From Octopus sinensis (taxonomy: Eukaryota), in the NCBI RefSeq assembly GCF_006345805.1, contig NC_043002.1, positions 116,808,001-116,872,000 of the forward strand: a DNA stretch of 64,000 nucleotides, given 5' to 3'. Under the pieces are notes generated by a model. That model had not been told where the DNA came from. It saw nothing but the letters and a program-made list of their open reading frames with translations, and searched no databases. Below, piece after piece: positions 1 through 56,980 of the stretch. Both the position numbers and the translations under genes were made by a program. Each line of letters opens with the position of its first letter. The first letter of the stretch is position 1.

Positions 1-1141
1 ATTTGGGAATAAAAACATGACAGTGGAGACAGAAGAAAACCGAACGTTAGACCAGAACGAGAGGAAAATAGTGAACGCTGAGAGAGACATTTTTTAAGAG
101 AAAAGATAGAAGACAGAGATAGAAACGCATCCACTCTTTTGAACGTCCGTGCAGGAAAAGAAAGACGGTCACGTGAGGAAAAGAAAGATGAATTATGGTT
201 ACGTGTGAGCAACGAGAGATCGTTGCTCACACGTACGGCGTACAAAAGTTTCAAATCGCCTAAACAAACACATTGAAAGCAGTGAAAAGTCCCGCCTGAA
301 AATAAAACTGTTAGAAATTGAAAATTGTCTGCAACTCTCCCATGAAAAAGAAAGAGCAGACAAAGAAGCCTGGGCTATAGACAACATAAAATCTAACCCC
401 AGAGCTTTCTACAGGTATGCCAAAGAAACAGCTACGGTGCACTGTAGGATAGGGCCACTCCTAGAAAAGGATGGCACACTCACAGGAAATCCAATGATAG
501 TAAGTGAAATACTAAATGAGCAATTCAAGAGTATTTTCACTCCACCCCTTGGGCATTTTCAAGTCAGCAATCCAACTGACTTCTTTACCACTGCAGATAT
601 AAAATCAGAGGCAGCGATGATTGATTACATCAATATAAAGGAAGACGATGTAATAAAGGCTATAGATGAAATGAAAACAAACCAGCTACTGGCCCCGATG
701 GATTCCCAGCAATACTTCTAAATGTATGTAAGAGAGTCCTAGCAAGACAACTGCTGTTCCTCTTTCAGAGCTTCCTTGCAGCTGGCAAACTTCCAAGAAA
801 ACTGAAGGAAGGTAAAATATGCCCTATTCATAAAGGAGGTAGCAGAGCGGAGGCCAAGAACTACAGACCTATCTCTCTCACCTCACACATCAGCAAGGTC
901 ATGGAACGAATAGTCAGAAGGAAACTAATCACCTACCTTGAAGAAAATGACTTGCTGCCTGACACCCAACATGGTTTCCGACCGGGAAGAAGCTGCTTAA
1001 CTCAGCTCCTACAACACTATGACTGCGTGCTGAAACGACTGCTCAACCACTCAAATGTGGAAGTGATATATCTCGACTTTGCAAAGGCCTTTGATAAAGT
1101 CGATCATGGAATGATATGTCACAAACTGCGTGATCTTGGCA
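1..1141 (+). mobile_element. CR1/L2-type LINE ORF2 fragment (linker plus N-terminal half of reverse transcriptase), frameshifted and 3'-truncated
   Basis: Translation gives ATGPDGFP...KICPIHKGGSRAEAKNYRPISLTSHISKVMERIV...QHGFRPGRSCLTQLL...VIYLDFAKAFDKVDH; frameshift near 690; ends abruptly at mariner sequence. Confidence 0.9.
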
Positions 1142-1814
1142 AAGTGGTAGTCGGTAGGAGAAAGGTCTGGAGAATAAGCTGGGTGGGGAAGAACTTCGTA
1201 GCCAAGTTCCCTCAACTTCTGGAGTGTCATTAGATCAGATTTAGGGAAGCTTTTCAGTGCATCATTTTGGTCCAACCACTGCGAAGAACGTTTTTCATTA
1301 TTGTACAGAACCCAATTTTCATTGTGAGTTACAATAAAGTCGAGAAATGGATTGGTCGGGTTACGGAGAAGAGACGAGCAAGCTTCATATTTGCACATTT
1401 CCTGATTTATATTCAAATCGTGTCTAGCTTTTCTGATTTTCCAATCGCATGTAAATGGCTTCAGGCAGTTTTCTGGATAACCTGAAGTTCTTTTGCTAGT
1501 TCTCGAGTGGTATTATGTGAATCTTTCTCAATGACGGTCTTTTTATTGACCGCCATCGATGACAGATGGGCGTCCACTATTCTCATGATCTTGAAGGTTC
1601 AGGTCAGCTGCTTTACGTCCTTTCTTAAAGTTGAATAGCAAAATTGCTCGAATAATATGCTTTGACAGTTCCATTTTAGATGATTTTAACAACGGTGAAA
1701 AAATATCAATGTTAATTTATTGATGCATCTGGGCAAATCTATGTCAAAACTCTGCAAAAATCCGGTACAAATTCTTCATGTCTCAAAACGTTGCTTACTT
1801 TTTACTCAACCTGA
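1142..1814 (-). mobile_element. Mariner transposon, internally deleted, 3' end lost
   Basis: Minus-strand ORF has FLDFIVTHNENWVLYNN and EVLPHPAYSPDLSPTDYH; 5' TIR-like TA|TCAGGTTGAGTAAAAAG ends at 1814. Confidence 0.85.

Positions 1815-3307: not shown

Positions 3308-3382
<75 letters not shown>
3150..3382. repeat. (TG)n/(TA)n microsatellite
   Basis: Direct reading. Confidence 0.95.
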
Positions 3383-3384
<2 letters not shown>

Positions 3385-3385
<1 letters not shown>

Positions 3386-3760
3386 AAGAAAAGCTAACGA
3401 ATATAGCGCTGATGACGGAATTCAAACTCCCCTGTTTGTGATCCAGAAACACCGTGTTCGCTATTAACGGTAAGTGACTGAATTCGTATATTTGCCACTC
3501 CGGTTTTGTGTATGTGAGCCGCAAGGGCCTTTGTTTTTGGAATCTCCACTTATAGAAATGGAAAAACGGTCTTTGACTGCCATTTCTAATTCCTTCGGTA
3601 TGAGGCGAAACAGCTTGCTGCTAGCCAACTTATTTTTCTTTACTATATACTGAACCTTACAAAGGTCTTGACAATTATTTTGTCGTATTTACATACCGAA
3701 ATTTACCGGTAAATAATTGTTGGTTACATGAAAAACCACAGGAAAATTATTTACCATTTT
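3385..3760 (+). mobile_element. Penelope-like pLTR fragment
   Basis: Carries a hammerhead motif and lies between (TA)n tracts; no protein homology seen. Confidence 0.5.
3403..3464 (+). ncRNA. Type I hammerhead ribozyme motif (variant, GUU triplet)
   Basis: atagcg-CTGATGA-c[gga..caaac/gtttg..tcc]a-GAAA-caccgtGTT-cgctat; 6-bp stem I. Confidence 0.65.
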
Positions 3761-3803: not shown

Positions 3804-4625
3804 GCGATGGGTAAATTGTCACCTTTTCATATTTTTAATTTAGTGCATGCACATTGTTTGTATTTGATTTTGTCACTACACAGTATTGTAGGGTCATTTG
3901 GGCACCATCTGTGATAAAAACACCATCATGACGCAATTCGTTTTGCCAGAAATTTAGAAACGACATAATGTACTGCTTGGCATTCGCGCCAGAAACTCCA
4001 ATATGAACATTTCAGAGTGTTTGGGTGTCAAACTGTGGGTAGTGCAGGGTTTTGGAAAGAGTTGGATCAGTCTAATGGTGATTACGAAGGTACGGCAGCT
4101 CGGAAACAAACAACAGAATTTGTTGGTGAGATCCAGGCCATGATTGACAACGTTCCCTCGTCTGTCAGGTCCATAGCGAGACATGGGAATGTCTGAGTAT
4201 CTTATCAGGCAGGTAGTGCCTGAAGACATTCGGTATTCCTCATGCAAGAGGAGAAAGGGCCAATCTTTATCCCAAGCTATCAAGGACAAGAGGCTTTTGA
4301 ACAAACCCAAGTATTCCCTCCAACCGAACATGCTTTGGTATTCCTCAGACGAGAAATTTCTGCCAGGATCAGATGGTGAACACACAGAACAACCATTGGC
4401 TTACCGTGTTCCCAAAACATGTACTGAAATTTATAAAAATAAAAACATCCAATCAATATCATGGTGACTTGAGTGATCACTAGTGATGGCGACGTTGCGT
4501 CTCCATTCATCTTCCCACACGGTTTAAAGCCTACGTAATGACAATAGTCGACGAGAATACATTTAGCTCTTCGCTCCGACATTCGAAACTCCAAGTATTA
4601 TAATGACAACTTACTGTTTTTCTAA
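3800..4625 (+). mobile_element. maT/DD37D-like Tc1-mariner transposon, decayed
   Basis: TIR-like GGGTGCGATGGGTAAATTGTCACC after TA; transposase remnants EFVGEIQAMIDN..SVRSIARDMG, WYSSDEK, ITSDGDVASPFIFPHGLK; degenerate right TIR near 4603-4615. Confidence 0.75.
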
Positions 4626-5935: not shown

Positions 5936-6310
5936 TGTGGTAGCGCAATGGACCAGTGGTTAGGGCAGTGGACTCACGGTCATAGGATCGCGGTTTCGAT
6001 TCCCAAACCGTGCGTTGTGAGTGTTTATTGAGCGAAAATACATAGAGCTCCACGAGGCTCTGGCAGGGGTGGTGGTGGGGAACCCTGCTGTACTCTTTCA
6101 CCAAAACATTCTCTCACTCTTTTTTCCTGTTTCTGTTGTTCCTGTATTTCTAAAGGCCAGCCTTGTCACACGCTGAATCTTCCCAAGAACTGCGTTAAGG
6201 GTACACGTATCTGTTGAGTGCTCAGCCACTTGCACGGTAATTTCACGAACAGGCTGTTCCGTTGATCGGATCAACTGGAACCCTCGTCGTCGTATCCGAC
6301 AGAGTGCCAC
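5936..6310 (+). mobile_element. tRNA-derived SINE, family C
   Basis: A box (TGGACCAGTGG) and B box (GGTTTCGATTCCC); colinear with the copy at 14232. Confidence 0.9.
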
Positions 6311-8850
6311 TGTGCTTATGAATTAAACATGATGAGTAACTAGGAACAGAGAACTTAGTTCCATCAAAACAGAGCAAAACATAGGGGATTGTAAAATGAA
6401 TGTTACATTATATAAATAAAGATCCCACAACTGTACAAATATTTCAACACCTAAGTATTTTTATCAATGTTTAAGAAAAAGGTATGTAAAATATTTTCAA
6501 ATAAACAACATAAAATTACCTGCAGAAATTCTCTCATATTGAATTAAGCGGGAAGAATACGTTTAAAATCTGAAAGCAGGCGATGATAAAAATAAGAAAT
6601 ATCGAGAGACCACGAAAAAGAATTCATTTAGTTGATTTTACTAACGTGAATAATGGTCCATAACTAGAAAGAGCAACAGCAGTTTGAGAAGAATCAAATT
6701 CTCCGTTAACTAGTAAAACGTAATGCTCGAAAACTGCTAGCTGTTGAAGTTCTATATGGTATAATATCCAGAACTAATCTCAAATACAGTGTCAGAATTT
6801 GCTGGGTACTTCCTTCGTGAAAGGTCATTTGCAATAAGACCTACACAAGAACCTTATATACATAGAGTTCCAACAGATCCGCCAAACCTCTACTGCATTT
6901 TATGTAGAAAGGTATACTATTCTACTAAGAATGAAAATTTCATTTTAGCCGTGTATATAAGGATGAAGCCGCTGATGGAGAAACACTTGAGAGAATTCTG
7001 TGCTATATCAACACAAAAGAAATTATAAAGTCATGGTGAGGTAATCACACAAGGTTCCATCTCAAAACAGCTATCATAGAAATGGGATCATCCTGAGAAT
7101 GCGGCTTGAAGGATTTAATAGTCAAATCAAGCTTAGTACTTGTTTTCAATCTGGTTCTTACCGTATTAGTGCATTTCACTGAATCTCTTTCAGGGCCATT
7201 AAGAATCCAACCGTGAATATTTGTGAATTGTGAATGTATAAGACTATAAATAGGCGTAAAATAGTGCACACAACTGAAATAAAAGTATATCTAAATTACA
7301 CTTTTTTCTTAATACTTTTTATGCAGAGGTCGAAGGAAGGCTTTCGTTAGGAGTGGTCCAGATAGCCATTCATGATACAGAGGCTGGAGCCTAGTTCAGT
7401 TCGGGAGTGAATCGTCATCGCATGTCACTTAGTCGCAAACATATGTCGTATAGCTGCAATAGAATGCTGTATCAGCAACAATAATGTGATTTCCCTAAGA
7501 CATCACCCAGTAATCTATCAAGTCCATTTACATATTTCTCAAAACATATTACTGTTATGACTTCTCTCCTTCATTTTATGCCTCCATCGTAGATGGGTAG
7601 ATATGTTAGTATGAATAATAGGCTTTCACAAAGTCTTCATGCCTACCAACTTCACTCGACCGGCTCTATAGAAGAAGAGATTTGAATTAAAACCGAATCC
7701 ATGCATAAACCTCTGACTCCCTTCAATCTCACCGTCTCTTCTCAAAAAAAAAAAAAATCCTCCCTCTTCTAATTGTAACCACAATTTTCATAATCTAAAA
7801 TACACAGCTCATTTCTAGTTCATCGGATATGATCCCATATTAATTCCGCATTTGCTCTTTGCATACCAATATAACAACCCTCAACAAATCATTCCTTCCA
7901 CTTCACCGACTCTTTCGGCTGCGCCTCCAAAAGCTTTAAATAGTATTTTCTGAACAGATAGGCCGGATATTAGTCGGCTGATTGACAGAACATCTGGGGG
8001 CTATCCGAATCCCCAATGTCTTCTGCCCCATGCCATTTGTCTTCCATCGTCTGCCCCATGCTATTTATGATCCATGGATCATATTAACCGGAGCCTCTTT
8101 ATTTTTAGTTCTGATTTGAACACTAGAAACACCAGTTCTTGCCTCCGGAGAGGAGACCAAACTGTCTTCTTAGAATTTTTGCATTCCCTTCCACATTTTC
8201 TGTTAAGGAGCGCTTCATTCGAAATATCGCGTATATTCACACACACCATTACATCCGACAGTCATACAAACACATCGACTGTCCACATTTGAAGCAGTTA
8301 CCCGCATATTATATATGTACATTAATCTCATACGCAGACTTAGACACAAGACACGCACACACACATAGACACTAAAGACACACATATCACTTGAACAAAC
8401 ACATTACTCACGCATACACATACCAATAGAGAAACACGTTCGGCTATGCGCGAAACACAGTTCCACATATTCCAAATATACAAATATGAACATGAAATAC
8501 TTACACGCTTACCTGTCTACTTAAACACAAAGTACACACAAGCACACCCGCGCACACACTTTCGAAACGAATTCAACACTGCATATATGAACATATAATA
8601 CAACTGAATTAGACACACATTCAACATTTAAACACACGCAGGCACGCACATGCACACACACACACACTCACTCGCGCGCGCGCTCTTCAGAATACGCAAA
8701 CTTTTACACACAGACATACAGACACTCAAACACACATATACGCACACTCCGAAATAAACAAGCATACATACAGTAGTTTCTCTCACATACAGAGAAGTCA
8801 CGTACACGCATGCACATACACACGCACGTGCATATATCCTTCCAGCTTAC

Positions 8851-11346: not shown

Positions 11347-12588
11347 TTGGTTCATCCCATAAATAATGCAGGTTTTTTGTACTTCTTTTACTTTTCAAAA
11401 TGAAGATCAACAAAGTTCTTTTTTAATCTAAAATATACCCTCCTTTATTATCAACAACGCTCTTCCATCTATCTGATTGACTTGCGATGAAAAATACTCC
11501 TCCAGTACTGTTCCAACCTCGTCTATAGAAATCATAGTTTTTTTTCCGTCCAAATGATTTTGATGACAGTCGAATAAATGATAATCAGCTGGAGCAATAT
11601 CCGGTGATATATGGTGGGTGGGGTGTCGTTTCCCATTCGAACTGCTCCGGCCTTTGGGTTGTCATCTCCGCTGTATATGGCCGAGCATTATCCAGATGGC
11701 AGAACACCTTTTGTCTTGAAACCAAAAATGGTTGTTTTTCTTCTAGCGCTGACTTAAGCCACTCAAGCTGCTTGCAGCTGATCTCCTTTGTTATTGTTTG
11801 GTCTTGGTTTGAAAGGTCAAAGTGGACTAAACCTTTAATATCCCACCAAACAGATAACAACTCCTTACGTGGGTGAAGATCTTCTTTAGCCTGAGATGCC
11901 GGTATTTCCCCCTTCCCTACCCACTCTTCGGCGTTTGATATTTTTATAGAAAACCCATTTCTCATCACCAGTTACTATTCAGTCCCAAAAAGGTTCATTC
12001 ATAAGACGTAACAGCAAAGAAGAGGAAACATTCTTTGCGCGAGATTAGAGTCGGAAAGTTTGTGAGGAACCCATTGACCCAATTTACTGACCTTTTTTAT
12101 GGCAATTAGATATCGATGAATGGTTGAATGACCAAATCCAAGTTTCTCTACTAGTTCCTCAACAGTTATGATGGAATTTTTGTTCCACTAGAGTTTGCAG
12201 GACGTTCTCGTCGAGCTCTACAGATCTTCCAGGACAAGGCTCGTCTTCTAGGCAGTAGTTCCCGGCTCGGAATTTCCGGAACCACCGTTAGCATTGACTT
12301 ACGCTTATTGTCCAGTCCCCTTTTACTGCATTACCATTCCTCACACTTTCCGTTGCGGTGTTGCCTCATAAAGCAAAATATACCGAATATGCTCCTTTGT
12401 CATTTCCATTATAGCTTTGAAAAACTGTTAAAATCAAACTGCACTCTTCAAAACTTGCACGAAGAATAAGCAAAAGGCATAATTAGTACCTGCTTTTATA
12501 GCAAATTGATGTAGAAAATTTATCCTGTCCCCCTCCGACCTTTAGCTCATGCAATTGAAAACACCGCATTATTTATGGGATGACCCAA
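11347..12588 (-). mobile_element. Full-length (1242 bp) decayed mariner transposon
   Basis: TIRs TTGG(T/G)TCATCCCATAAATAATGC with TA at 11345-6 and 12589-90; IVTGDEKW, LHPRKELLSVWWDIKG, HLDNARPY, HPPY motifs with stops and frameshifts. Confidence 0.92.
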
Positions 12589-16808: not shown

Positions 16809-17073
16809 GGTGCCGGCGTGGCTGTGTGGCGGGCCGAGCAAAGCCTTCTGAGTGGATTTGTATATATATATATATGCATATATTTGTGTGTGTGTCTGTG
16901 TTTGCCCCCAACCATCATCACTTGAAAAGCGATGCTGGTGTGCTTAGGCAAAAGAAACCGATAGAATAAGTACTCGGCTTACAAAGAATAAGTCCTGGGG
17001 GCGATTTGTTTGAGTAAAATCCTTTAAGGCATTGCTCCAGCATGGCCGCAGTCAAATAACTGATGCAACTAAA
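16809..17073 (+). mobile_element. SINE family A, internally deleted
   Basis: Head TGGCTGTGTGG fused to CGGGCCGA; tail GATAGAATAAGTACT...GCTCCAGCATGGCCGCAGTC. Confidence 0.85.
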
Positions 17074-17527
17074 ATATATATATATGCTGTATGCACTCAT
17101 ACACACATACGCATATATATGTAATGTCTCGGTTAGTTTATTCTCTCTTCATTGTCTAGTTTCTCAGACTCTAGGTTTGGCGGTAGCCACACGGAAAGCC
17201 ATAAACTAAATTCAGGTTGGAGTGCGGCATCTTCTCTGCCGATGCACTTAAATCTGGTGATGTGTAAGCCATAACTCTGCTAACGCTTAATGACGTTATT
17301 TATCTTCTACTATTTTCATTTTATGTTTTGCTTTCTTAATCAAGAATGATAATACTTTTAGAATGGCTTTGTAGAGGCATTGTGTAGTGTTTTTGAGGGT
17401 AATGGATGCTCGTACATGATTGAAGACGTTTGTAGTAAAATCTGTATAATTCGGCATTTGTTTCACTAAAGGACTGTGTCCATCGTAAGTAGGAGTGATA
17501 TGGTTAGTCTTGGAATCGAGTTCTTAT

Positions 17528-18235
17528 CACCATCATCATCATAATTCGTCCAACCTGTGGTTGGTCGGAACTCCATCGACAATCCCTTTCCACACTATGA
17601 GGTCCTGCATTGCTGTGTTTAGATCTCTAATATCCAGCCCGGAGTCCCGAGATACAGTATCTGGAAATGTCAATTTCCTGAAGAAAACACTTCCAGAGGG
17701 ATACCATAGAAGCAGGGATGAGATAACCTCTTTTTCTGCTCGATGACAGTGGCCAGCAAATTGTAGCCGTTTCTACTTTAGCATGAGGAATATTGGTATC
17801 AGATTTCCGTACATGTTACTAAGTGTTGGGTGTGATCTCTAACAGATGTTCTGTATCTTTCTGAGCAGGTTGGTATATATTCCATCTAGTTATTTTTCTA
17901 AGAGAGCCGATAAGGTCCAGGTCCCCGATCCATAGACAAGGACGGCCTCAATTAATGTTCTAAATATTTTAACTTTTCACGTGGGTGGCAGGTTTAAGTG
18001 CTAGATCTTATCAAGTCTATTACATGCATCCCTAGCAAGAGCCTTGCGGATGCGAAAGTCTCTTTGGGAGTCTCCTATGTGTGATCCAAGTTATTTGAAT
18101 TCTTCAACGTTTTTGATTGATTTATCATTGAGCGATTTAAGTTCAGTTAACTTGGAGGAAGTCATGAAAAACTCTGTCTTACTCTCGTTACAGTAAAATC
18201 CTACATGGCTTGTTGCTCTCTCTTGTGCTTGTACG
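17528..18235 (-). mobile_element. RTE-clade LINE, 3' segment with (TGA)n tail
   Basis: Minus strand VGFYCNESKTE...EEFK*LGS...KVKIFRTLIEAVLVYGSGTWTLS...RLQFAGHCHRA, then tgatgatgatggtg tail. Confidence 0.9.
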
Positions 18236-20574
18236 GGGTATGTGGAGGTACACTCCACATAGCATTACGTCCATGCCCTGTATAGCTGGAATGGGTAGAC
18301 AGGACTCCCTCAGCCTAGGTGAAGGTAACCTGCCTAGGTGAAGGAAATCTCTTATAAGAAAAACAATCCGCTGAATTGAAATACCAAGTTGGTGTCTGCG
18401 CGGGATAAATTTACCTCATGGCTAGAGAGAAGTTTTAACCCTTGGACAGCAGTCTCCGTTGAGATGGTGTCTAGTATGTAAAAGTATCAGGATGTAGGAC
18501 TGGCGATCCACTTCTGTATGAGCTACCGAAAGAATAACCCTGACGTCCACTTGCAGCACCAGGGTTCGAGCCCCTGCTTGTTCAGATCCAAAGTCTCCCC
18601 TTGTTTCCCATGAAACGTATGACCAGCTACCTCTAAACTCCTTAGAGCAGGGTAGCTGTGAAGAGGTAGATGTAGAATGCAGAAACAACAAACAAGTTTA
18701 TGAAGTGCAAAAGACCTGTTGCCTACAGCACTTTTTAACTCACAAACTTTATCAAAGACAAGCAGAAAACAAGAACTCCTGCATTGTGTAAAGAACAAAG
18801 TCGATATCTTGAGCATCCAAGAACACAGGCATCACCAATCTGATACAAAACTTGATAGATACCAACTTATTATGACCTCTGCTATTAAAAACTTCCAGGG
18901 CCCCACTATAGGCGGTGTTGGTACTTTCTTGTGTCTAAGGGCCTCAGGGAACTTGCTCTGTGTTGAGAAAATATCTGACCGCATAATTGTTGCATTCATT
19001 GTATGTTACTGCCCAACTAACACATATGATGAGACACTTGCAAACGACTTCTACTCCGATCTGAAGAGTGTAACAGAAAGTGTCTCTTCCCACATATTTT
19101 TTGTTATTGCAGGTGATTTTAATGGCCAATGAGGGAGGGATGATGCTCTTTTCACCTATAACAAGGAGACTAATTGGAACAGGATAAAACTGATTGATTT
19201 TGCTCACGAGTTCCAACTTCAGATTGCAAACACAAGGTCCATGAAACACCCAAGGCGTTTGTGGACATTCCAGCATCCATCTGGATCGTATTCACAAATC
19301 GACTACATACTTGTAAGAAACAAGTGGAAGGACAGTGTCCGAAATGCACAGACATACTCCTCCTTCGCATCTATTGGCTCAGATCATAGAGTTGCTTCCA
19401 TAAACACTGTTCTTACCCTTAGATCATCAAAGCCACCAGTCCCAAACCTTATGAAACAGGTGTACAGGTCCAAGGTATCATCAGATAAAACCTCAGAGCA
19501 CTCATTTGCAGTAGATGCTAAAAACCGTTTTGAAATACTCTCAGAACACACTGACAACATTGAAACACAATATTAGAAACTCGTAAGTTACAGAAGAAAT
19601 TGCCCTTTCAAAACTACCTGAAAAAAAAAGAATAAAGCACAGATCAATTCCTTCATATATCTGTGTGAGAGAAGCAAGGAAGCATCTAGAAAGATCGAAA
19701 CATGAACAGAGGACTACTAAAAATAACTTCAAAGGTGCTTCCAAAGCTCAAGGAACACTAGACGAGGCATATGCCAATGTAGAAACGGGTTATATTCTAG
19801 CTGAGATTAACAAAATTGCATGCTGCAGAATGGATATTAGTAGACACACTAACTGGAAGAAAAATTTAAGCCCTCCATCAGGCTTAAAAAGTTATTCCTC
19901 TGGAAACCGCAAGATCAACTGGTTTGACACCTTTCAGAAACTTCTTGGAGAACCACCACAAACAAAGAATCTTCCACTTCCTCTACACCAAATATCTAAT
20001 GTATTCGACATCAACACCAACCTTTTCACAATGGATGAGCTCAAAGTAGCTCTCAGTTCTCAGTAGTTTGGCTAGCAATAAATCCCCAGGACTCGATAAC
20101 ATACCAACATTACTGTGAAAGATCCAGTATTTCATGAAACATTACTAGATTTCTGCAACGATACATGCACATCATTTGCCTCCATCAGCTTAGTTGAAGG
20201 GTGCAATTATCTCTGTCCCTAAAACAGGTGATCTAACAAGTGCAACAAATTATAGAGGCATTACTCTGATCCCAATTGCATCAAAAGTTTCTAACAAACT
20301 TCTGTTTAATAGGATTGTGTCTATACTCGATCCACTTCTTCGTAGGAATCAGAATGGATTTAGAAGGGGACGATCAACAACTACTCGAATCCTTTCCATC
20401 CGTCGCATACTGGAAGAAATGAAAAAGTTTAACAAGAGCATCACAATCTGTTTTGTCGACTTTCGCAAAGCATTTGATTCGATCAGCAAAGATCTTATGT
20501 TTAAAATCCTTGTACTCTATGGTATTCCTTCAAGGTTTGTTAATGCTATCAGAGCGCTGTACACAAACACCACT
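18236..20574 (+). mobile_element. Same RTE LINE, inverted 5' segment (5'UTR, APE endonuclease, first half of RT)
   Basis: DILSIQEHR, VIAGDFNG, SQIDYILVRNKW, GSDHR, NYRGITL, QNGFRRGRST, FVDFRKAFDS; ends at YTNTT directly against the TSD GAGTTCTTAT. Confidence 0.92.
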
Positions 20575-21258
20575 GAGTTCTTATTATGATGACGCAGTGG
20601 TACAGGCATTGCATTACTGTTACTAACTGTATTCAATAACAATGTTGCATCAGTTGCAATACTCTCAACGAAATAATTAGCAGAAATCAGTACTACCCCC
20701 TTTCAAAGTTGAAACCATTTACATTAATTACATATACGCATACCATAAAGCACAGTAGCGTTGAGAAAAACAAAAGAAATATGAAAGCACTAAATATATC
20801 ATAAACGATCATGGATTATCATCGCAAAATAACCAAGTATTTCTCAGTTTGACAAGCAGAAGAGCCACTTCTATCTCTAAGATTTTCAGGGAGAGTGATA
20901 ATTGCTATTGTCATTGTCTTTCATCTAAACACTACTGGATATATATGTGTCATAAGTGTAATAACAACAGCAATTTACTGCTGGTTGATGCTTCCTCTTC
21001 GCATGGAATACTTCTGATTAAATTAGGTGAGAGTTGACCAGCTTCCATTTGAAAATATGTAACCGATGGAAATCCGCTGATAAATGGTTTCAGAAATACA
21101 CAAGGATACAGTAACGTTAATTTTTGAATAAGAATACTGTTATTTTTCAGTATGCAGAGTTAGACAAGTAGGAGAAAACAAATTCGATATTGTTATAAAT
21201 AGAAAATATATTCAGGACCTCCATATTTATTAATGTAGCTAACATATAAACTCGAAAA

Positions 21259-30210: not shown

Positions 30211-30620
30211 CTCTTTACTCTTTTACTTGTTTCAGTCATTTGACTGCGGCCATGCTGGAGCACCACCTTTAATCGAGCAACTCGACCCCGGGACTTATTC
30301 TTTTGTAAGCCCAGTACTTATTCTATCGGTCTCTTTTGCCGAACCGCTAAGTGACGGGGACATAAACACACCAGCATCGGTTGTCAAGCAATGCTAGGGG
30401 GACAAACACAGACACACAAACACATACACACACATACATATATATACATATATACGACAGGCTTCTTTCAGTTTCCGTCTACCAAATCCACTCACAAGGC
30501 ATTGGTCGGCCCGGGGCTATAGCAGAAGACACTTGCCCAACATGCCACGCAGTGGGACTGAACCCGGAACCATGTGGTTGGTTAGCAAGCTACTTACCAC
30601 ACAGCCACTCCTGCGCCTAT
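30211..30620 (-). mobile_element. SINE family A, complete and well preserved
   Basis: Head GGCGCAGGAGTGGCTGTGTGG...GGTTCAGTCCC, central GGGCAAGTGTCTTC..GGATTTGGTAGACGGAAACTGAAAGAAGCC, internal microsatellite, (AAAGAG)-like tail. Confidence 0.93.
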
Positions 30621-45635: not shown

Positions 45636-46690
<1,055 letters not shown>

Positions 46691-53937: not shown

Positions 53938-54157
53938 TCTTTTATTCTTTTACTATTTTACCTGTTTTACTATTTTACCAGTTTCAGTCTTGTGACAGCG
54001 GCCATGCTCGAGCAGATAAACCTCAGGACTTATTCTTTGTAAGCCTAGTACTTATTCTCTCGGTTTCTTTTGCCGAACTGCTGAGTTACGGTGACGTAAA
54101 CACAGCAACATCGGTTGTAATGCGACAGTGGGAGAACCAACACAAACTAATTCATAC

Positions 54158-56626: not shown

Positions 56627-56980
56627 ATAGGCGAAGGCATGGCTGTGAGTGGATTTGGTAGACGGAAACTAAAAGAAGCCCGTCGTGTGTATATATATAT
56701 ATAATATATATATATATATTATATATATATATATACATATATGTATGTATTTATATTTATTTATGTGTGTGTGTGTGTTTCTACCCCACGCTATCGCTTG
56801 ACAACCTGCGCTGGCGTGTTTATGTACCCGTAACTTATCGTTTCAGCAAAAGGGTCCGATAGAATAAGTACTAGGTTTATAAAGAATAAGTCCTGGGATT
56901 GATTTCTTTGAGTAAAATCTTTTAAGGCGGCGCTCCAGCATGGCCGTAGTCATATGACTGAAAGAAGTAAAAGAATAAAA
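56627..56980 (+). mobile_element. SINE family A, internally deleted
   Basis: TGGCTGTG joined to AGTGGATTTGG through TGTG microhomology; full tail. Confidence 0.85.

What the first reader, a model, noticed from the sequence alone, without database searches (positions are those of the whole stretch)
17518..20584. Twin-priming-type 5' inversion in a near-full-length RTE LINE, bounded by a perfect 10-bp TSD
Seen: the 3' segment (RT end plus (TGA)n tail) lies on minus at 17528-18235. The 5'UTR, endonuclease and first half of RT lie on plus at 18236-20574, head-to-head with it. GAGTTCTTAT flanks the whole insert (17518-27, 20575-84), and one inversion breakpoint abuts the TSD exactly. The RT segment between YTNTT and VQAQE, which should include the catalytic xADD motif, is missing. 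Known: this is the architecture of twin priming (Ostertag and Kazazian), described mainly for mammalian L1. Inference: an invertebrate RTE element can undergo twin priming, and the TSD may have microhomology with the element's internal sequence after TTT (e.g. an R-V-L-T coding stretch).
Basis: partly seen in the sequence, partly recalled or inferred. Interest (0 to 1): 0.85.

Follow-up and report, generated by a model that had tools for sequence, protein, structure and literature searches.

The report
Head-to-head inverted RTE retrotransposon insertion
An old, decayed RTE-type jumping gene in what looks like an octopus genome was inserted with its front 2.3 kb flipped relative to its tail end, the pattern expected from "twin priming", a mechanism known almost only from mammalian L1 elements; it is one clear example, not a new mechanism.

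Summary
A perfect 10-bp direct repeat, GAGTTCTTAT (17518-27 and 20575-84), brackets 3,047 bp made of two pieces of one RTE-like LINE lying head to head. The 3' piece (17528-18233, minus) holds the RT C-terminal part and the (TGA)n tail. The 5' piece (18235-20574, plus) holds the 5' end, the endonuclease and the N-half of RT.

Colinear relatives from Octopus bimaculoides, O. vulgaris and O. sinensis show three things:
- The plus piece starts at the element's canonical 5' terminus (GGGGTATGTGG).
- The two pieces are neighbours in the element, with 87 codons (about 261 nt, including the FADD catalytic motif) missing between them.
- Both pieces are about equally diverged from the family consensus (7.4% and 8.9%).

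An exact 10-mer repeat at the boundaries is unlikely by chance (about 4e-5 at the exact positions, about 9e-4 with ±5 nt slack). Twin priming is the best explanation (about 0.72).

The TSD shares only 1 nt (G) with the element sequence past the breakpoint, and the inversion junction has none.

I could not test an empty site or long reads. This is a new member of a known kind, of moderate interest.

The parts
17518..17527 (.). Left copy of the target-site duplication, GAGTTCTTAT. In the element's sense orientation this is the 3' TSD, ATAAGAACTC.
   Evidence: chance test
17528..17541 (-). Short (TGA)n 3' tail, TGA TGA TGA TGG TG(A). The first TGA (17541-17539) is the ORF stop codon. The final A is shared with the TSD (1-nt ambiguity).
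   Evidence: the same ...GAAGGA(TGA)n ends occur in five octopus copies
17528..18233 (-). Non-inverted 3' piece: the C-terminal part of RT (relative P0001 aa 793-1008, P0028 aa 309-538) plus the tail. In the model this is cDNA 1, primed from the first nick.
18234..18234 (.). Single nucleotide (C on plus) at the inversion junction that matches neither piece. It is either an untemplated or filler base, or a substitution in the last base of the 3' piece.
18235..20574 (+). Inverted 5' piece (2,340 nt). It runs from the canonical 5' terminus GGGGTATGTGG through the 5' UTR, the N-terminal region and endonuclease (about 18552-19585), the linker, and RT motifs up to ...RALYTNTT (19593-20574). In the model this is cDNA 2, primed from the second nick.
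18239..18261 (+). 9-bp hairpin at the 5' end of the element (TATGTGGAG / GTACA / CTCCACATA).
   Evidence: dG -16.2 kcal/mol, z -3.6. It does not fold significantly in the O. bimaculoides copy, so its relevance is uncertain.
20575..20584 (.). Right copy of the target-site duplication, GAGTTCTTAT. Its first G is the only base shared with the element consensus past the breakpoint.

Best explanation
This is a single retrotransposition event of an RTE-like LINE, resolved by twin priming.

Shown:
- One 10-bp TSD pair encloses two head-to-head pieces of one element.
- The tail abuts the left TSD, and an internal RT position abuts the right TSD.
- The inverted piece begins at the element's true 5' end.
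- About 261 nt between the two pieces are missing.

Inferred order of events:
1. The element's endonuclease nicked the window's plus strand between T17527 and the T that is now 20585. The empty site would read ...GGAATC GAGTTCTTAT^TATGATGAC....
2. That 3'-OH primed reverse transcription on the (UGA)n tail and copied 706 nt (cDNA 1).
3. The other strand was cut 10 bp away, before cDNA 1 was finished. This freed the overhang 5'-ATAAGAACTC-3'.
4. That overhang primed a second reverse transcription on the same RNA, inside the RT region (P0001 codon 705/706). At most one base pair (C:G) held it there. This cDNA 2 ran 2,340 nt to the very 5' end of the RNA.
5. The roughly 261 nt of RNA between the internal priming site and the point reached by cDNA 1 were never copied, or were lost.
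6. The two cDNA 3' ends were joined without microhomology, with 0-1 extra nucleotide. Either end-to-end template jumping of the RT onto the 3' end of cDNA 2, or host end joining, would give this.

The copy was dead on arrival because it lacks the FADD active site. It has since picked up about 8% substitutions.
For: - TSD: exact 10/10 at the outer boundaries. Chance is 3.5e-5 at the exact positions and 8.5e-4 with ±5 nt slack.
- Same element: both pieces align to one colinear copy in O. bimaculoides. L001:3080-5251 matches the 5' piece and L001:5509-6214 matches the 3' piece at 79-84% identity, and both also match copies in L002-L006.
- Same age: divergence from the majority consensus of the other copies is 7.4% (32/430) for the end of the 5' piece and 8.9% (62/696) for the 3' piece.
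- Adjacent, not overlapping: P0001 aa 705 lies at 20574 and aa 793 at 18234, leaving a gap of 87 codons. The same gap is 257 bp in L001.
- 5' terminus: the 5' piece and the L001 copy both start at GGGGTATGTGG, with unrelated sequence upstream.
- Right junction: homology stops at ...AACACCACT(G), directly against the TSD.
- Tail: it lies directly against the other TSD and is typical of the family.
- TSD length: 10 bp fits the RTE-clade peak of 10-12 bp. It also lies within the 10-20 bp range of the TSDs seen on 5'-inverted L1 insertions in human cells; the authors suggest that shorter (~5-nt) overhangs may be too short to prime on the RNA (PMC4245944).
Against: - No empty site or orthologous locus could be examined, and no reads, so the single-event history rests on architecture alone.
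- Microhomology at the internal priming site is at most 1 nt. Only 4.6% of 5'-inverted human and chimpanzee L1 insertions lack microhomology there, and about 70% have 2-5 bp (PMC2912911).
- The inversion junction has no microhomology.
- The consensus used rests on only five 7-17% diverged copies from three other octopus assemblies.
- None of the six related copies fetched is inverted, so nothing shows that this is a regular outcome for the family.
Confidence: 0.72

Rival explanations
1. Two-template variant ('dual' priming). The second nick's 3' end primed on a second RNA molecule of the same family, not on the RNA being copied from its tail. Otherwise the pathway is the same.
For: The internal priming site has almost no complementarity to the overhang, so nothing ties the overhang to one particular RNA. 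Dual priming has been proposed for L1 and could not be told apart from twin priming there (PMC2837659).
Against: The two pieces do not overlap and lie in the order expected for one RNA (b at codon 705, c at codon 793). With two independent RNAs, an overlap would be about as likely as a gap. Their divergence is equal.
Confidence: 0.1
2. Inversion after insertion. A normal full-length minus-strand insertion with its TSD later suffered two breaks. The 5' 2.6 kb was re-ligated in reverse, with loss of about 261 bp.
For: This gives the same final order of pieces. The copy is old (about 8% diverged), so there has been time for rearrangement.
Against: One break would have to fall exactly (0-1 nt) at the boundary between the element's 5' terminus and the TSD, which is roughly a 1-in-3,000 coincidence. 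Twin priming predicts that boundary. No other rearrangement scars or duplicated bases are seen at the junctions.
Confidence: 0.07
3. Assembly artefact: a local mis-join or flipped contig piece inside a repeat.
For: Octopus genomes are repeat-rich, and LINEs are known to be hard to assemble there (PMC9115989). No reads were available to me.
Against: A mis-join would not put a perfect 10-bp direct repeat at the two outer boundaries. It would not place one breakpoint exactly at the element's 5' terminus, or remove exactly the stretch between the two arms. There is no second copy of the family in the window to be confused with.
Confidence: 0.05
4. Two independent insertions side by side: a 5'-truncated minus-strand copy, and a plus-strand copy that later lost its 3' end. 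The repeat would be a coincidence.
For: Nested and adjacent TE fragments are common in this window.
Against: This requires all of the following:
- a 3'-truncated LINE, which TPRT does not make;
- zero spacer between the two copies;
- complementary, non-overlapping element coordinates;
- equal age;
- a chance 10/10 repeat at the outer ends (p about 1e-3 or less).
Neither piece has a TSD of its own at the inner junction.
Confidence: 0.03

Closest known systems
Twin-primed (5'-inverted) mammalian L1 insertions (Ostertag and Kazazian 2001; described in PMC2912911, PMC2837659 and PMC4245944)
   Same: One TSD pair encloses two oppositely oriented pieces of one element. The tailed 3' piece is not inverted. 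The inverted piece comes from just upstream in the element, and its internal end lies against the other TSD. Element sequence is deleted between the arms. The TSD is at least 10 bp.
   Different: The element is an RTE-like LINE with a (TGA)n tail rather than poly(A), and the host is apparently an octopus. Microhomology at the internal priming site is at most 1 nt and is 0 at the inversion junction, whereas L1 typically has 2-5 bp. I also note that here the inverted arm reaches the element's exact 5' terminus.
Single 5'-inverted Nimb-2_DR insertion recovered in chicken DT40 cells (PMC4245944)
   Same: It is a non-L1 LINE showing a 5' inversion, and that element gives TSDs of about 12 bp. It is the only non-L1 case reported in that study.
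   Different: That was one experimental de novo event of a zebrafish element in cultured cells. This is an old natural genomic copy of a different clade in a mollusc.
Octopus RTE-clade LINEs (for example RTE-2_OV in O. vulgaris, PMC9115989) and the related copies fetched here (L001-L006)
   Same: The same kind of element and apparently the same host genus. Colinear relatives at 79-86% nucleotide identity occur in O. bimaculoides, O. vulgaris and O. sinensis, with the same (TGA)n ends.
   Different: All six fetched relatives are colinear and only the window copy is inverted. I could not establish identity with RTE-2_OV, because no matching sequence strings were found in that paper's supplements.

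Membership tests
Twin-priming 5'-inverted LINE insertion | Two pieces of the same element in opposite orientation inside a single pair of target-site duplications | tested here: met
   A 10/10 TSD lies at 17518-27 and 20575-84, with chance at or below about 1e-3. Both pieces align to single colinear octopus copies.
Twin-priming 5'-inverted LINE insertion | The non-inverted piece carries the element's 3' end and tail, directly against one TSD | tested here: met
   The ...TTA TGA TGA TGA TGG TG(A) tail abuts the TSD at 17527/17528. The family tail is confirmed in five other copies.
Twin-priming 5'-inverted LINE insertion | The internal (3'-most) end of the inverted piece lies directly against the other TSD | tested here: met
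   Homology to the relatives ends at ...AACACCACT(G), immediately before or at the first base of the TSD.
Twin-priming 5'-inverted LINE insertion | The arms are neighbours in element coordinates, with the inverted arm upstream and only a deletion or small duplication between them | tested here: met
   The arms end at P0001 aa 705 and start at aa 793, leaving a gap of 87 codons. The same gap is 257 bp in L001.
Twin-priming 5'-inverted LINE insertion | Both arms come from the same subfamily and have the same age | tested here: met
   Divergence from the consensus of the other copies is 7.4% and 8.9%. Only 5-6 reference copies were available, so subfamily resolution is coarse.
Twin-priming 5'-inverted LINE insertion | Microhomology between the TSD overhang and the internal priming site (present in about 95% of L1 cases, PMC2912911) | tested here: not met
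   Only 1 nt (G) is shared between GAGTTCTTAT and the consensus GCCACAGTTA. This is a usual feature of L1 cases, not a strictly defining one.
Twin-priming 5'-inverted LINE insertion | The empty site carries a single copy of the TSD | not testable with these tools
   No eukaryotic genome DNA search was available. A metagenome scan for the joined flanks gave 0 hits. The flanks are not part of a repeat, so there is no paralogous empty site.
RTE-clade LINE | A single long ORF with an N-terminal APE-type endonuclease followed by reverse transcriptase, in an element of about 3.2-3.3 kb | tested here: met
   Pfam finds PF03372/PF14529 and RVT_1. Intact relatives of 1006-1035 aa have the same order. 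The length is 3,047 + about 261 = about 3.3 kb.
RTE-clade LINE | A very short 3' UTR ending in a short microsatellite-like repeat | tested here: met
   The stop codon is the first unit of (TGA)n, so the 3' UTR is effectively absent, in the window and in five relatives. That this trait marks RTE is from PMC6007223 and from my own knowledge of Malik and Eickbush 1998.
RTE-clade LINE | TSD length around 10-12 bp | tested here: met
   The TSD is 10 bp. The clade value is from PMC4245944 and PMC6007223.
RTE-clade LINE | The RT domain falls within the RTE clade in a phylogeny with labelled reference LINEs | not tested
   No labelled reference set was available in the tools, and the protein hits carry no clade names.

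The most novel reading that the evidence does not exclude
[quoted passage not shown] They can then carry it to the RNA's 5' end. If so, 5' inversion would be a general, annealing-independent outcome of target-primed reverse transcription for LINEs whose TSDs are about 10 bp or longer, not a peculiarity of L1 in mammalian cells. Octopus RTE families would then contain a measurable fraction of such dead-on-arrival inverted copies.
Probability: 0.3. Interest if true: 0.55.

Novelty: new member of a known kind. Interest (0 to 1): 0.4.

Why it matters
In the literature I could search, twin priming is documented almost only for mammalian L1 and the RNAs it mobilises. The 40 listed of the 106 papers using the term are nearly all about mammalian L1 or L1-mobilised sequences, and none concerns an RTE or an invertebrate LINE. 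An experimental comparison found 5' inversions only for human L1 in human cells, plus one Nimb-2_DR event. That study argued that they depend on both the LINE and the host, and on an overhang long enough to prime (PMC4245944).

A clean natural example in an RTE-like element of a cephalopod, with a 10-bp TSD and almost no microhomology, has three uses:
- It extends the phenomenon to another clade and phylum.
- It fits the overhang-length idea.
- It hints that annealing is not required.

It also matters for annotating octopus genomes. RTE LINEs there are under study for possible activity in the brain (PMC9115989), and inverted copies would be miscounted as two fragments. This is one old copy, so the weight is modest until a genome-wide census is done.

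Tried and rejected
- Other copies in the window: a self-BLAST of the element against the 64 kb found none.
- The missing 257-bp stretch elsewhere in the window: none.
- A paralogous empty site: the joined flanks were searched against the window and six octopus loci. Only an unrelated SINE-like repeat about 450 bp to the left matched, and nothing spans the insertion point.
- Empty site in public data: an exact 23-mer across the joined flanks gave 0 hits in JGI metagenomes. A conserved RT 26-mer, meant to harvest more family copies, also gave 0.
- Longer microhomology through an offset annealing: the consensus has CAGTTATAT 6 nt downstream, which resembles GAGTTCTTAT. Priming there would have kept GCCAC in the insert, and it is absent, so I rejected this.
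- Snap-back copying of cDNA 1: rejected, because the inverted arm is a different part of the element and not a palindromic copy of the 3' arm.
- A link to RTE-2_OV: protein and DNA strings of this family were not found in that paper's supplementary files.
- The Ostertag and Kazazian 2001 and Ichiyanagi and Okada 2008 papers are not held. I cite their content only through papers that are.
- Source species of the window: not established. No protein identical to a window ORF appeared in the protein searches.
- The tail-like TATGATGA in the right flank: I found no mechanism for it and treat it as unexplained.
Full report
**What is there**

The window carries GAGTTCTTAT at 17518-17527 and again at 20575-20584. 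The match does not extend on either side.

Between the two copies lie 3,047 bp made of two pieces.

- The left piece, read on the minus strand from about 18233 down to 17528, encodes the C-terminal third of a LINE reverse transcriptase. It ends ...GAC GAA TTA TGA TGA TGA TGG TG(A). The stop codon is therefore the first unit of a short (TGA)n tail, and that tail lies directly against the left repeat.
- The right piece, read on the plus strand from 18235 to 20574, carries about 300 nt of leader, an APE-type endonuclease (Pfam PF03372 and PF14529) and the first half of the RT domain (RVT_1 model positions 1-106 of 205). It ends ...RALYTNTT directly against the right repeat.

The copy is dead, with about 11 in-frame stops and at least three frameshifts. 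There is no other copy of the family in the window.

**Where it comes from**

Protein searches found intact relatives of 1006-1035 aa with the order endonuclease then RT, at about 50% identity. They also found closer fragments annotated in Octopus bimaculoides, O. vulgaris and O. sinensis.

I fetched six genomic loci around those fragments. Each holds one colinear copy of the family, 79-86% identical to the window pieces.

The window also shares a SINE-like repeat with the O. sinensis loci. It is rich in TA/TG microsatellites and has a mariner-type transposase fragment. It is therefore very probably an octopus genome, but I could not establish the species.

**Tests of the architecture**

1. 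Same element. In the O. bimaculoides copy, L001:3080-5251 matches the plus piece and L001:5509-6214 matches the minus piece, in one orientation.
2. Adjacent, not overlapping. tblastn with the intact relative P0001 puts aa 705 at 20574 and aa 793 at 18234. So 87 codons (about 261 nt; 257 bp in L001) are missing, including ...DLDFADD..., the catalytic motif. That stretch is nowhere else in the window.
3. True 5' end. The plus piece and the L001 copy both begin at GGGGTATGTGG, and the sequence upstream of each is unrelated. The inverted arm therefore reaches the element's terminus.
4. Same age. Against the majority consensus of the other copies, the last 436 bp of the plus piece differ at 7.4% (32/430) and the minus piece at 8.9% (62/696).
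5. The repeat is not chance. In 200,000 random position pairs 3,047 bp apart, an exact 10-mer repeat at the exact boundaries occurred 7 times. With ±5 nt slack it occurred 34 times in 40,000.
6. The family tail. All five relatives that retain a 3' end finish ...GAAGGA(TGA)n.

The four G's are 18235-18238, so the 5' piece starts at 18235. C18234 fits neither piece. Clear homology of the 3' piece ends at 18233.

**Mechanism**

The structure is what twin priming predicts (as described in PMC2912911 and PMC2837659).

1. A first nick on the plus strand after ...GAGTTCTTAT primes cDNA 1 on the tail.
2. A second nick 10 bp away frees the overhang 5'-ATAAGAACTC-3'.
3. That overhang primes cDNA 2 inside the same RNA.
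4. cDNA 2 runs to the RNA 5' end.
5. The RNA between the internal priming site and the stalled cDNA 1 is not represented.
6. The two cDNA ends are joined.

What is shown is the final arrangement. The order of events is inferred.

The key argument against an inversion after insertion is position. One breakpoint coincides, within 0-1 nt, with the boundary between the element's 5' terminus and the TSD. Twin priming requires that, while a random break would hit it about once in 3,000.

Two independent insertions would need several unlikely things together: a 3'-truncated LINE, no spacer, complementary coordinates, equal age and a chance TSD. A misassembly would not create the TSD or remove exactly the inter-arm stretch.

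**Microhomology**

Five relatives give ...AACACCACTG|CCACAGTTATATCT there, and the window reads ...AACACCACT|GAGTTCTTAT. Only the G is shared.

A similar string lies 6 nt downstream (CAGTTATAT). Priming there cannot explain the junction, because it would have kept GCCAC.

At the inversion junction there is no shared base, and there may be one extra nucleotide.

In human and chimpanzee L1, only 4.6% of 5'-inverted insertions lack microhomology at the 5' junction, and about 70% have 2-5 bp (PMC2912911). This copy is therefore atypical in that respect.

That is compatible with the report that animal RTE elements show only 1-2 nt of 3' microhomology with their targets (PMC6007223). It also fits an RT that can start, or jump templates, without annealing. 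That last point is an inference from what is known of R2 and is not tested here.

**Comparison with what is known**

- RTE-clade TSDs peak at 10-12 bp (PMC4245944 and PMC6007223, citing Ichiyanagi and Okada 2008). Here the TSD is 10 bp.
- In sense orientation the TSD starts with A, as reported for many animal RTEs (PMC6007223).
- In retrotransposition assays, 5' inversions were seen only for human L1 in human cells, plus one Nimb-2_DR insert in DT40 cells. The L1 inversions there had TSDs of 10-20 bp. The authors suggested that a ~5-nt overhang, as left by ZfL2-1, may be too short to base-pair stably with the RNA (PMC4245944).
- Of the 106 held papers that use the term 'twin priming', the 40 listed deal almost entirely with mammalian L1 or L1-mobilised sequences, and none concerns an RTE or an invertebrate LINE.

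I therefore file this as a new member of a known kind: a twin-primed insertion of an RTE-like LINE in a mollusc.

Membership in the RTE clade rests on architecture, size, the near-absent 3' UTR with a microsatellite tail, TSD length and the octopus context (PMC9115989). An RT phylogeny was not done.

**Limits**

- No empty site, no orthologous locus and no reads could be examined. Metagenome scans for the joined flanks and for a conserved RT 26-mer returned nothing.
- The consensus rests on five or six diverged copies from other assemblies.
- None of the six relatives is inverted, so the frequency of the event in this family is unknown.

**Verdict**

The twin-priming reading is well supported (0.72, plus 0.10 for a two-RNA variant). 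The microhomology conjecture is not supported. Interest is moderate: a neat, well-bounded example that extends a known mechanism, resting on one old copy.

Noticed in passing
window 20585-20592: Immediately after the right TSD the flank reads TATGATGA. These are the same letters as the element's own 3' end (TTATGATGATGA), but on the strand opposite to the real tail at 17528-17541. I found no mechanism for it. It may be chance (7-8 nt) or a sign of a target-site preference.
   Followed up: partly
window 18239-18261: The element's 5' end folds into a 9-bp hairpin right after GGGG (dG -16.2 kcal/mol, z -3.6). The O. bimaculoides copy (L001:3080-3119) does not fold significantly (z -0.09), so conservation is doubtful.
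   Followed up: partly
window 16944-17085; also 56846-56972, 30221-30343, 45659-45793, 54021-54077; L004:2593-2714 and 3314-3435; L006:9797-9919 and 8185-8295: A SINE-like repeat of about 130 bp has several copies in the window and in O. sinensis loci (72-93% identity). It supports an octopus origin for the window.
   Followed up: no
window 11585-11968 (-) and 901-1233 (+): There is a mariner-type transposase fragment (Pfam Transposase_1, E 2e-19) and an RVT_1 fragment of another retroelement (E 4e-7). An ORF at 1051-1416 (-) looks transposase-like by eye but gave no Pfam hit.
   Followed up: partly
L002:~3990-4050 and 6083-6140 (O. vulgaris): The related copy in O. vulgaris is flanked on both sides by an (AGT)n/(GTA)n microsatellite. 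It apparently inserted into a trinucleotide repeat.
   Followed up: no
window 18285-18310 versus L001:~3125: The 5' leader of the window copy has a 26-bp stretch that is absent from the O. bimaculoides copy. This is an indel of unknown direction.
   Followed up: no
whole window: TA, TG and TC microsatellites are very dense: 90 tandem-repeat rows in 64 kb. Many long 'ORFs' are just translated repeats.
   Followed up: no
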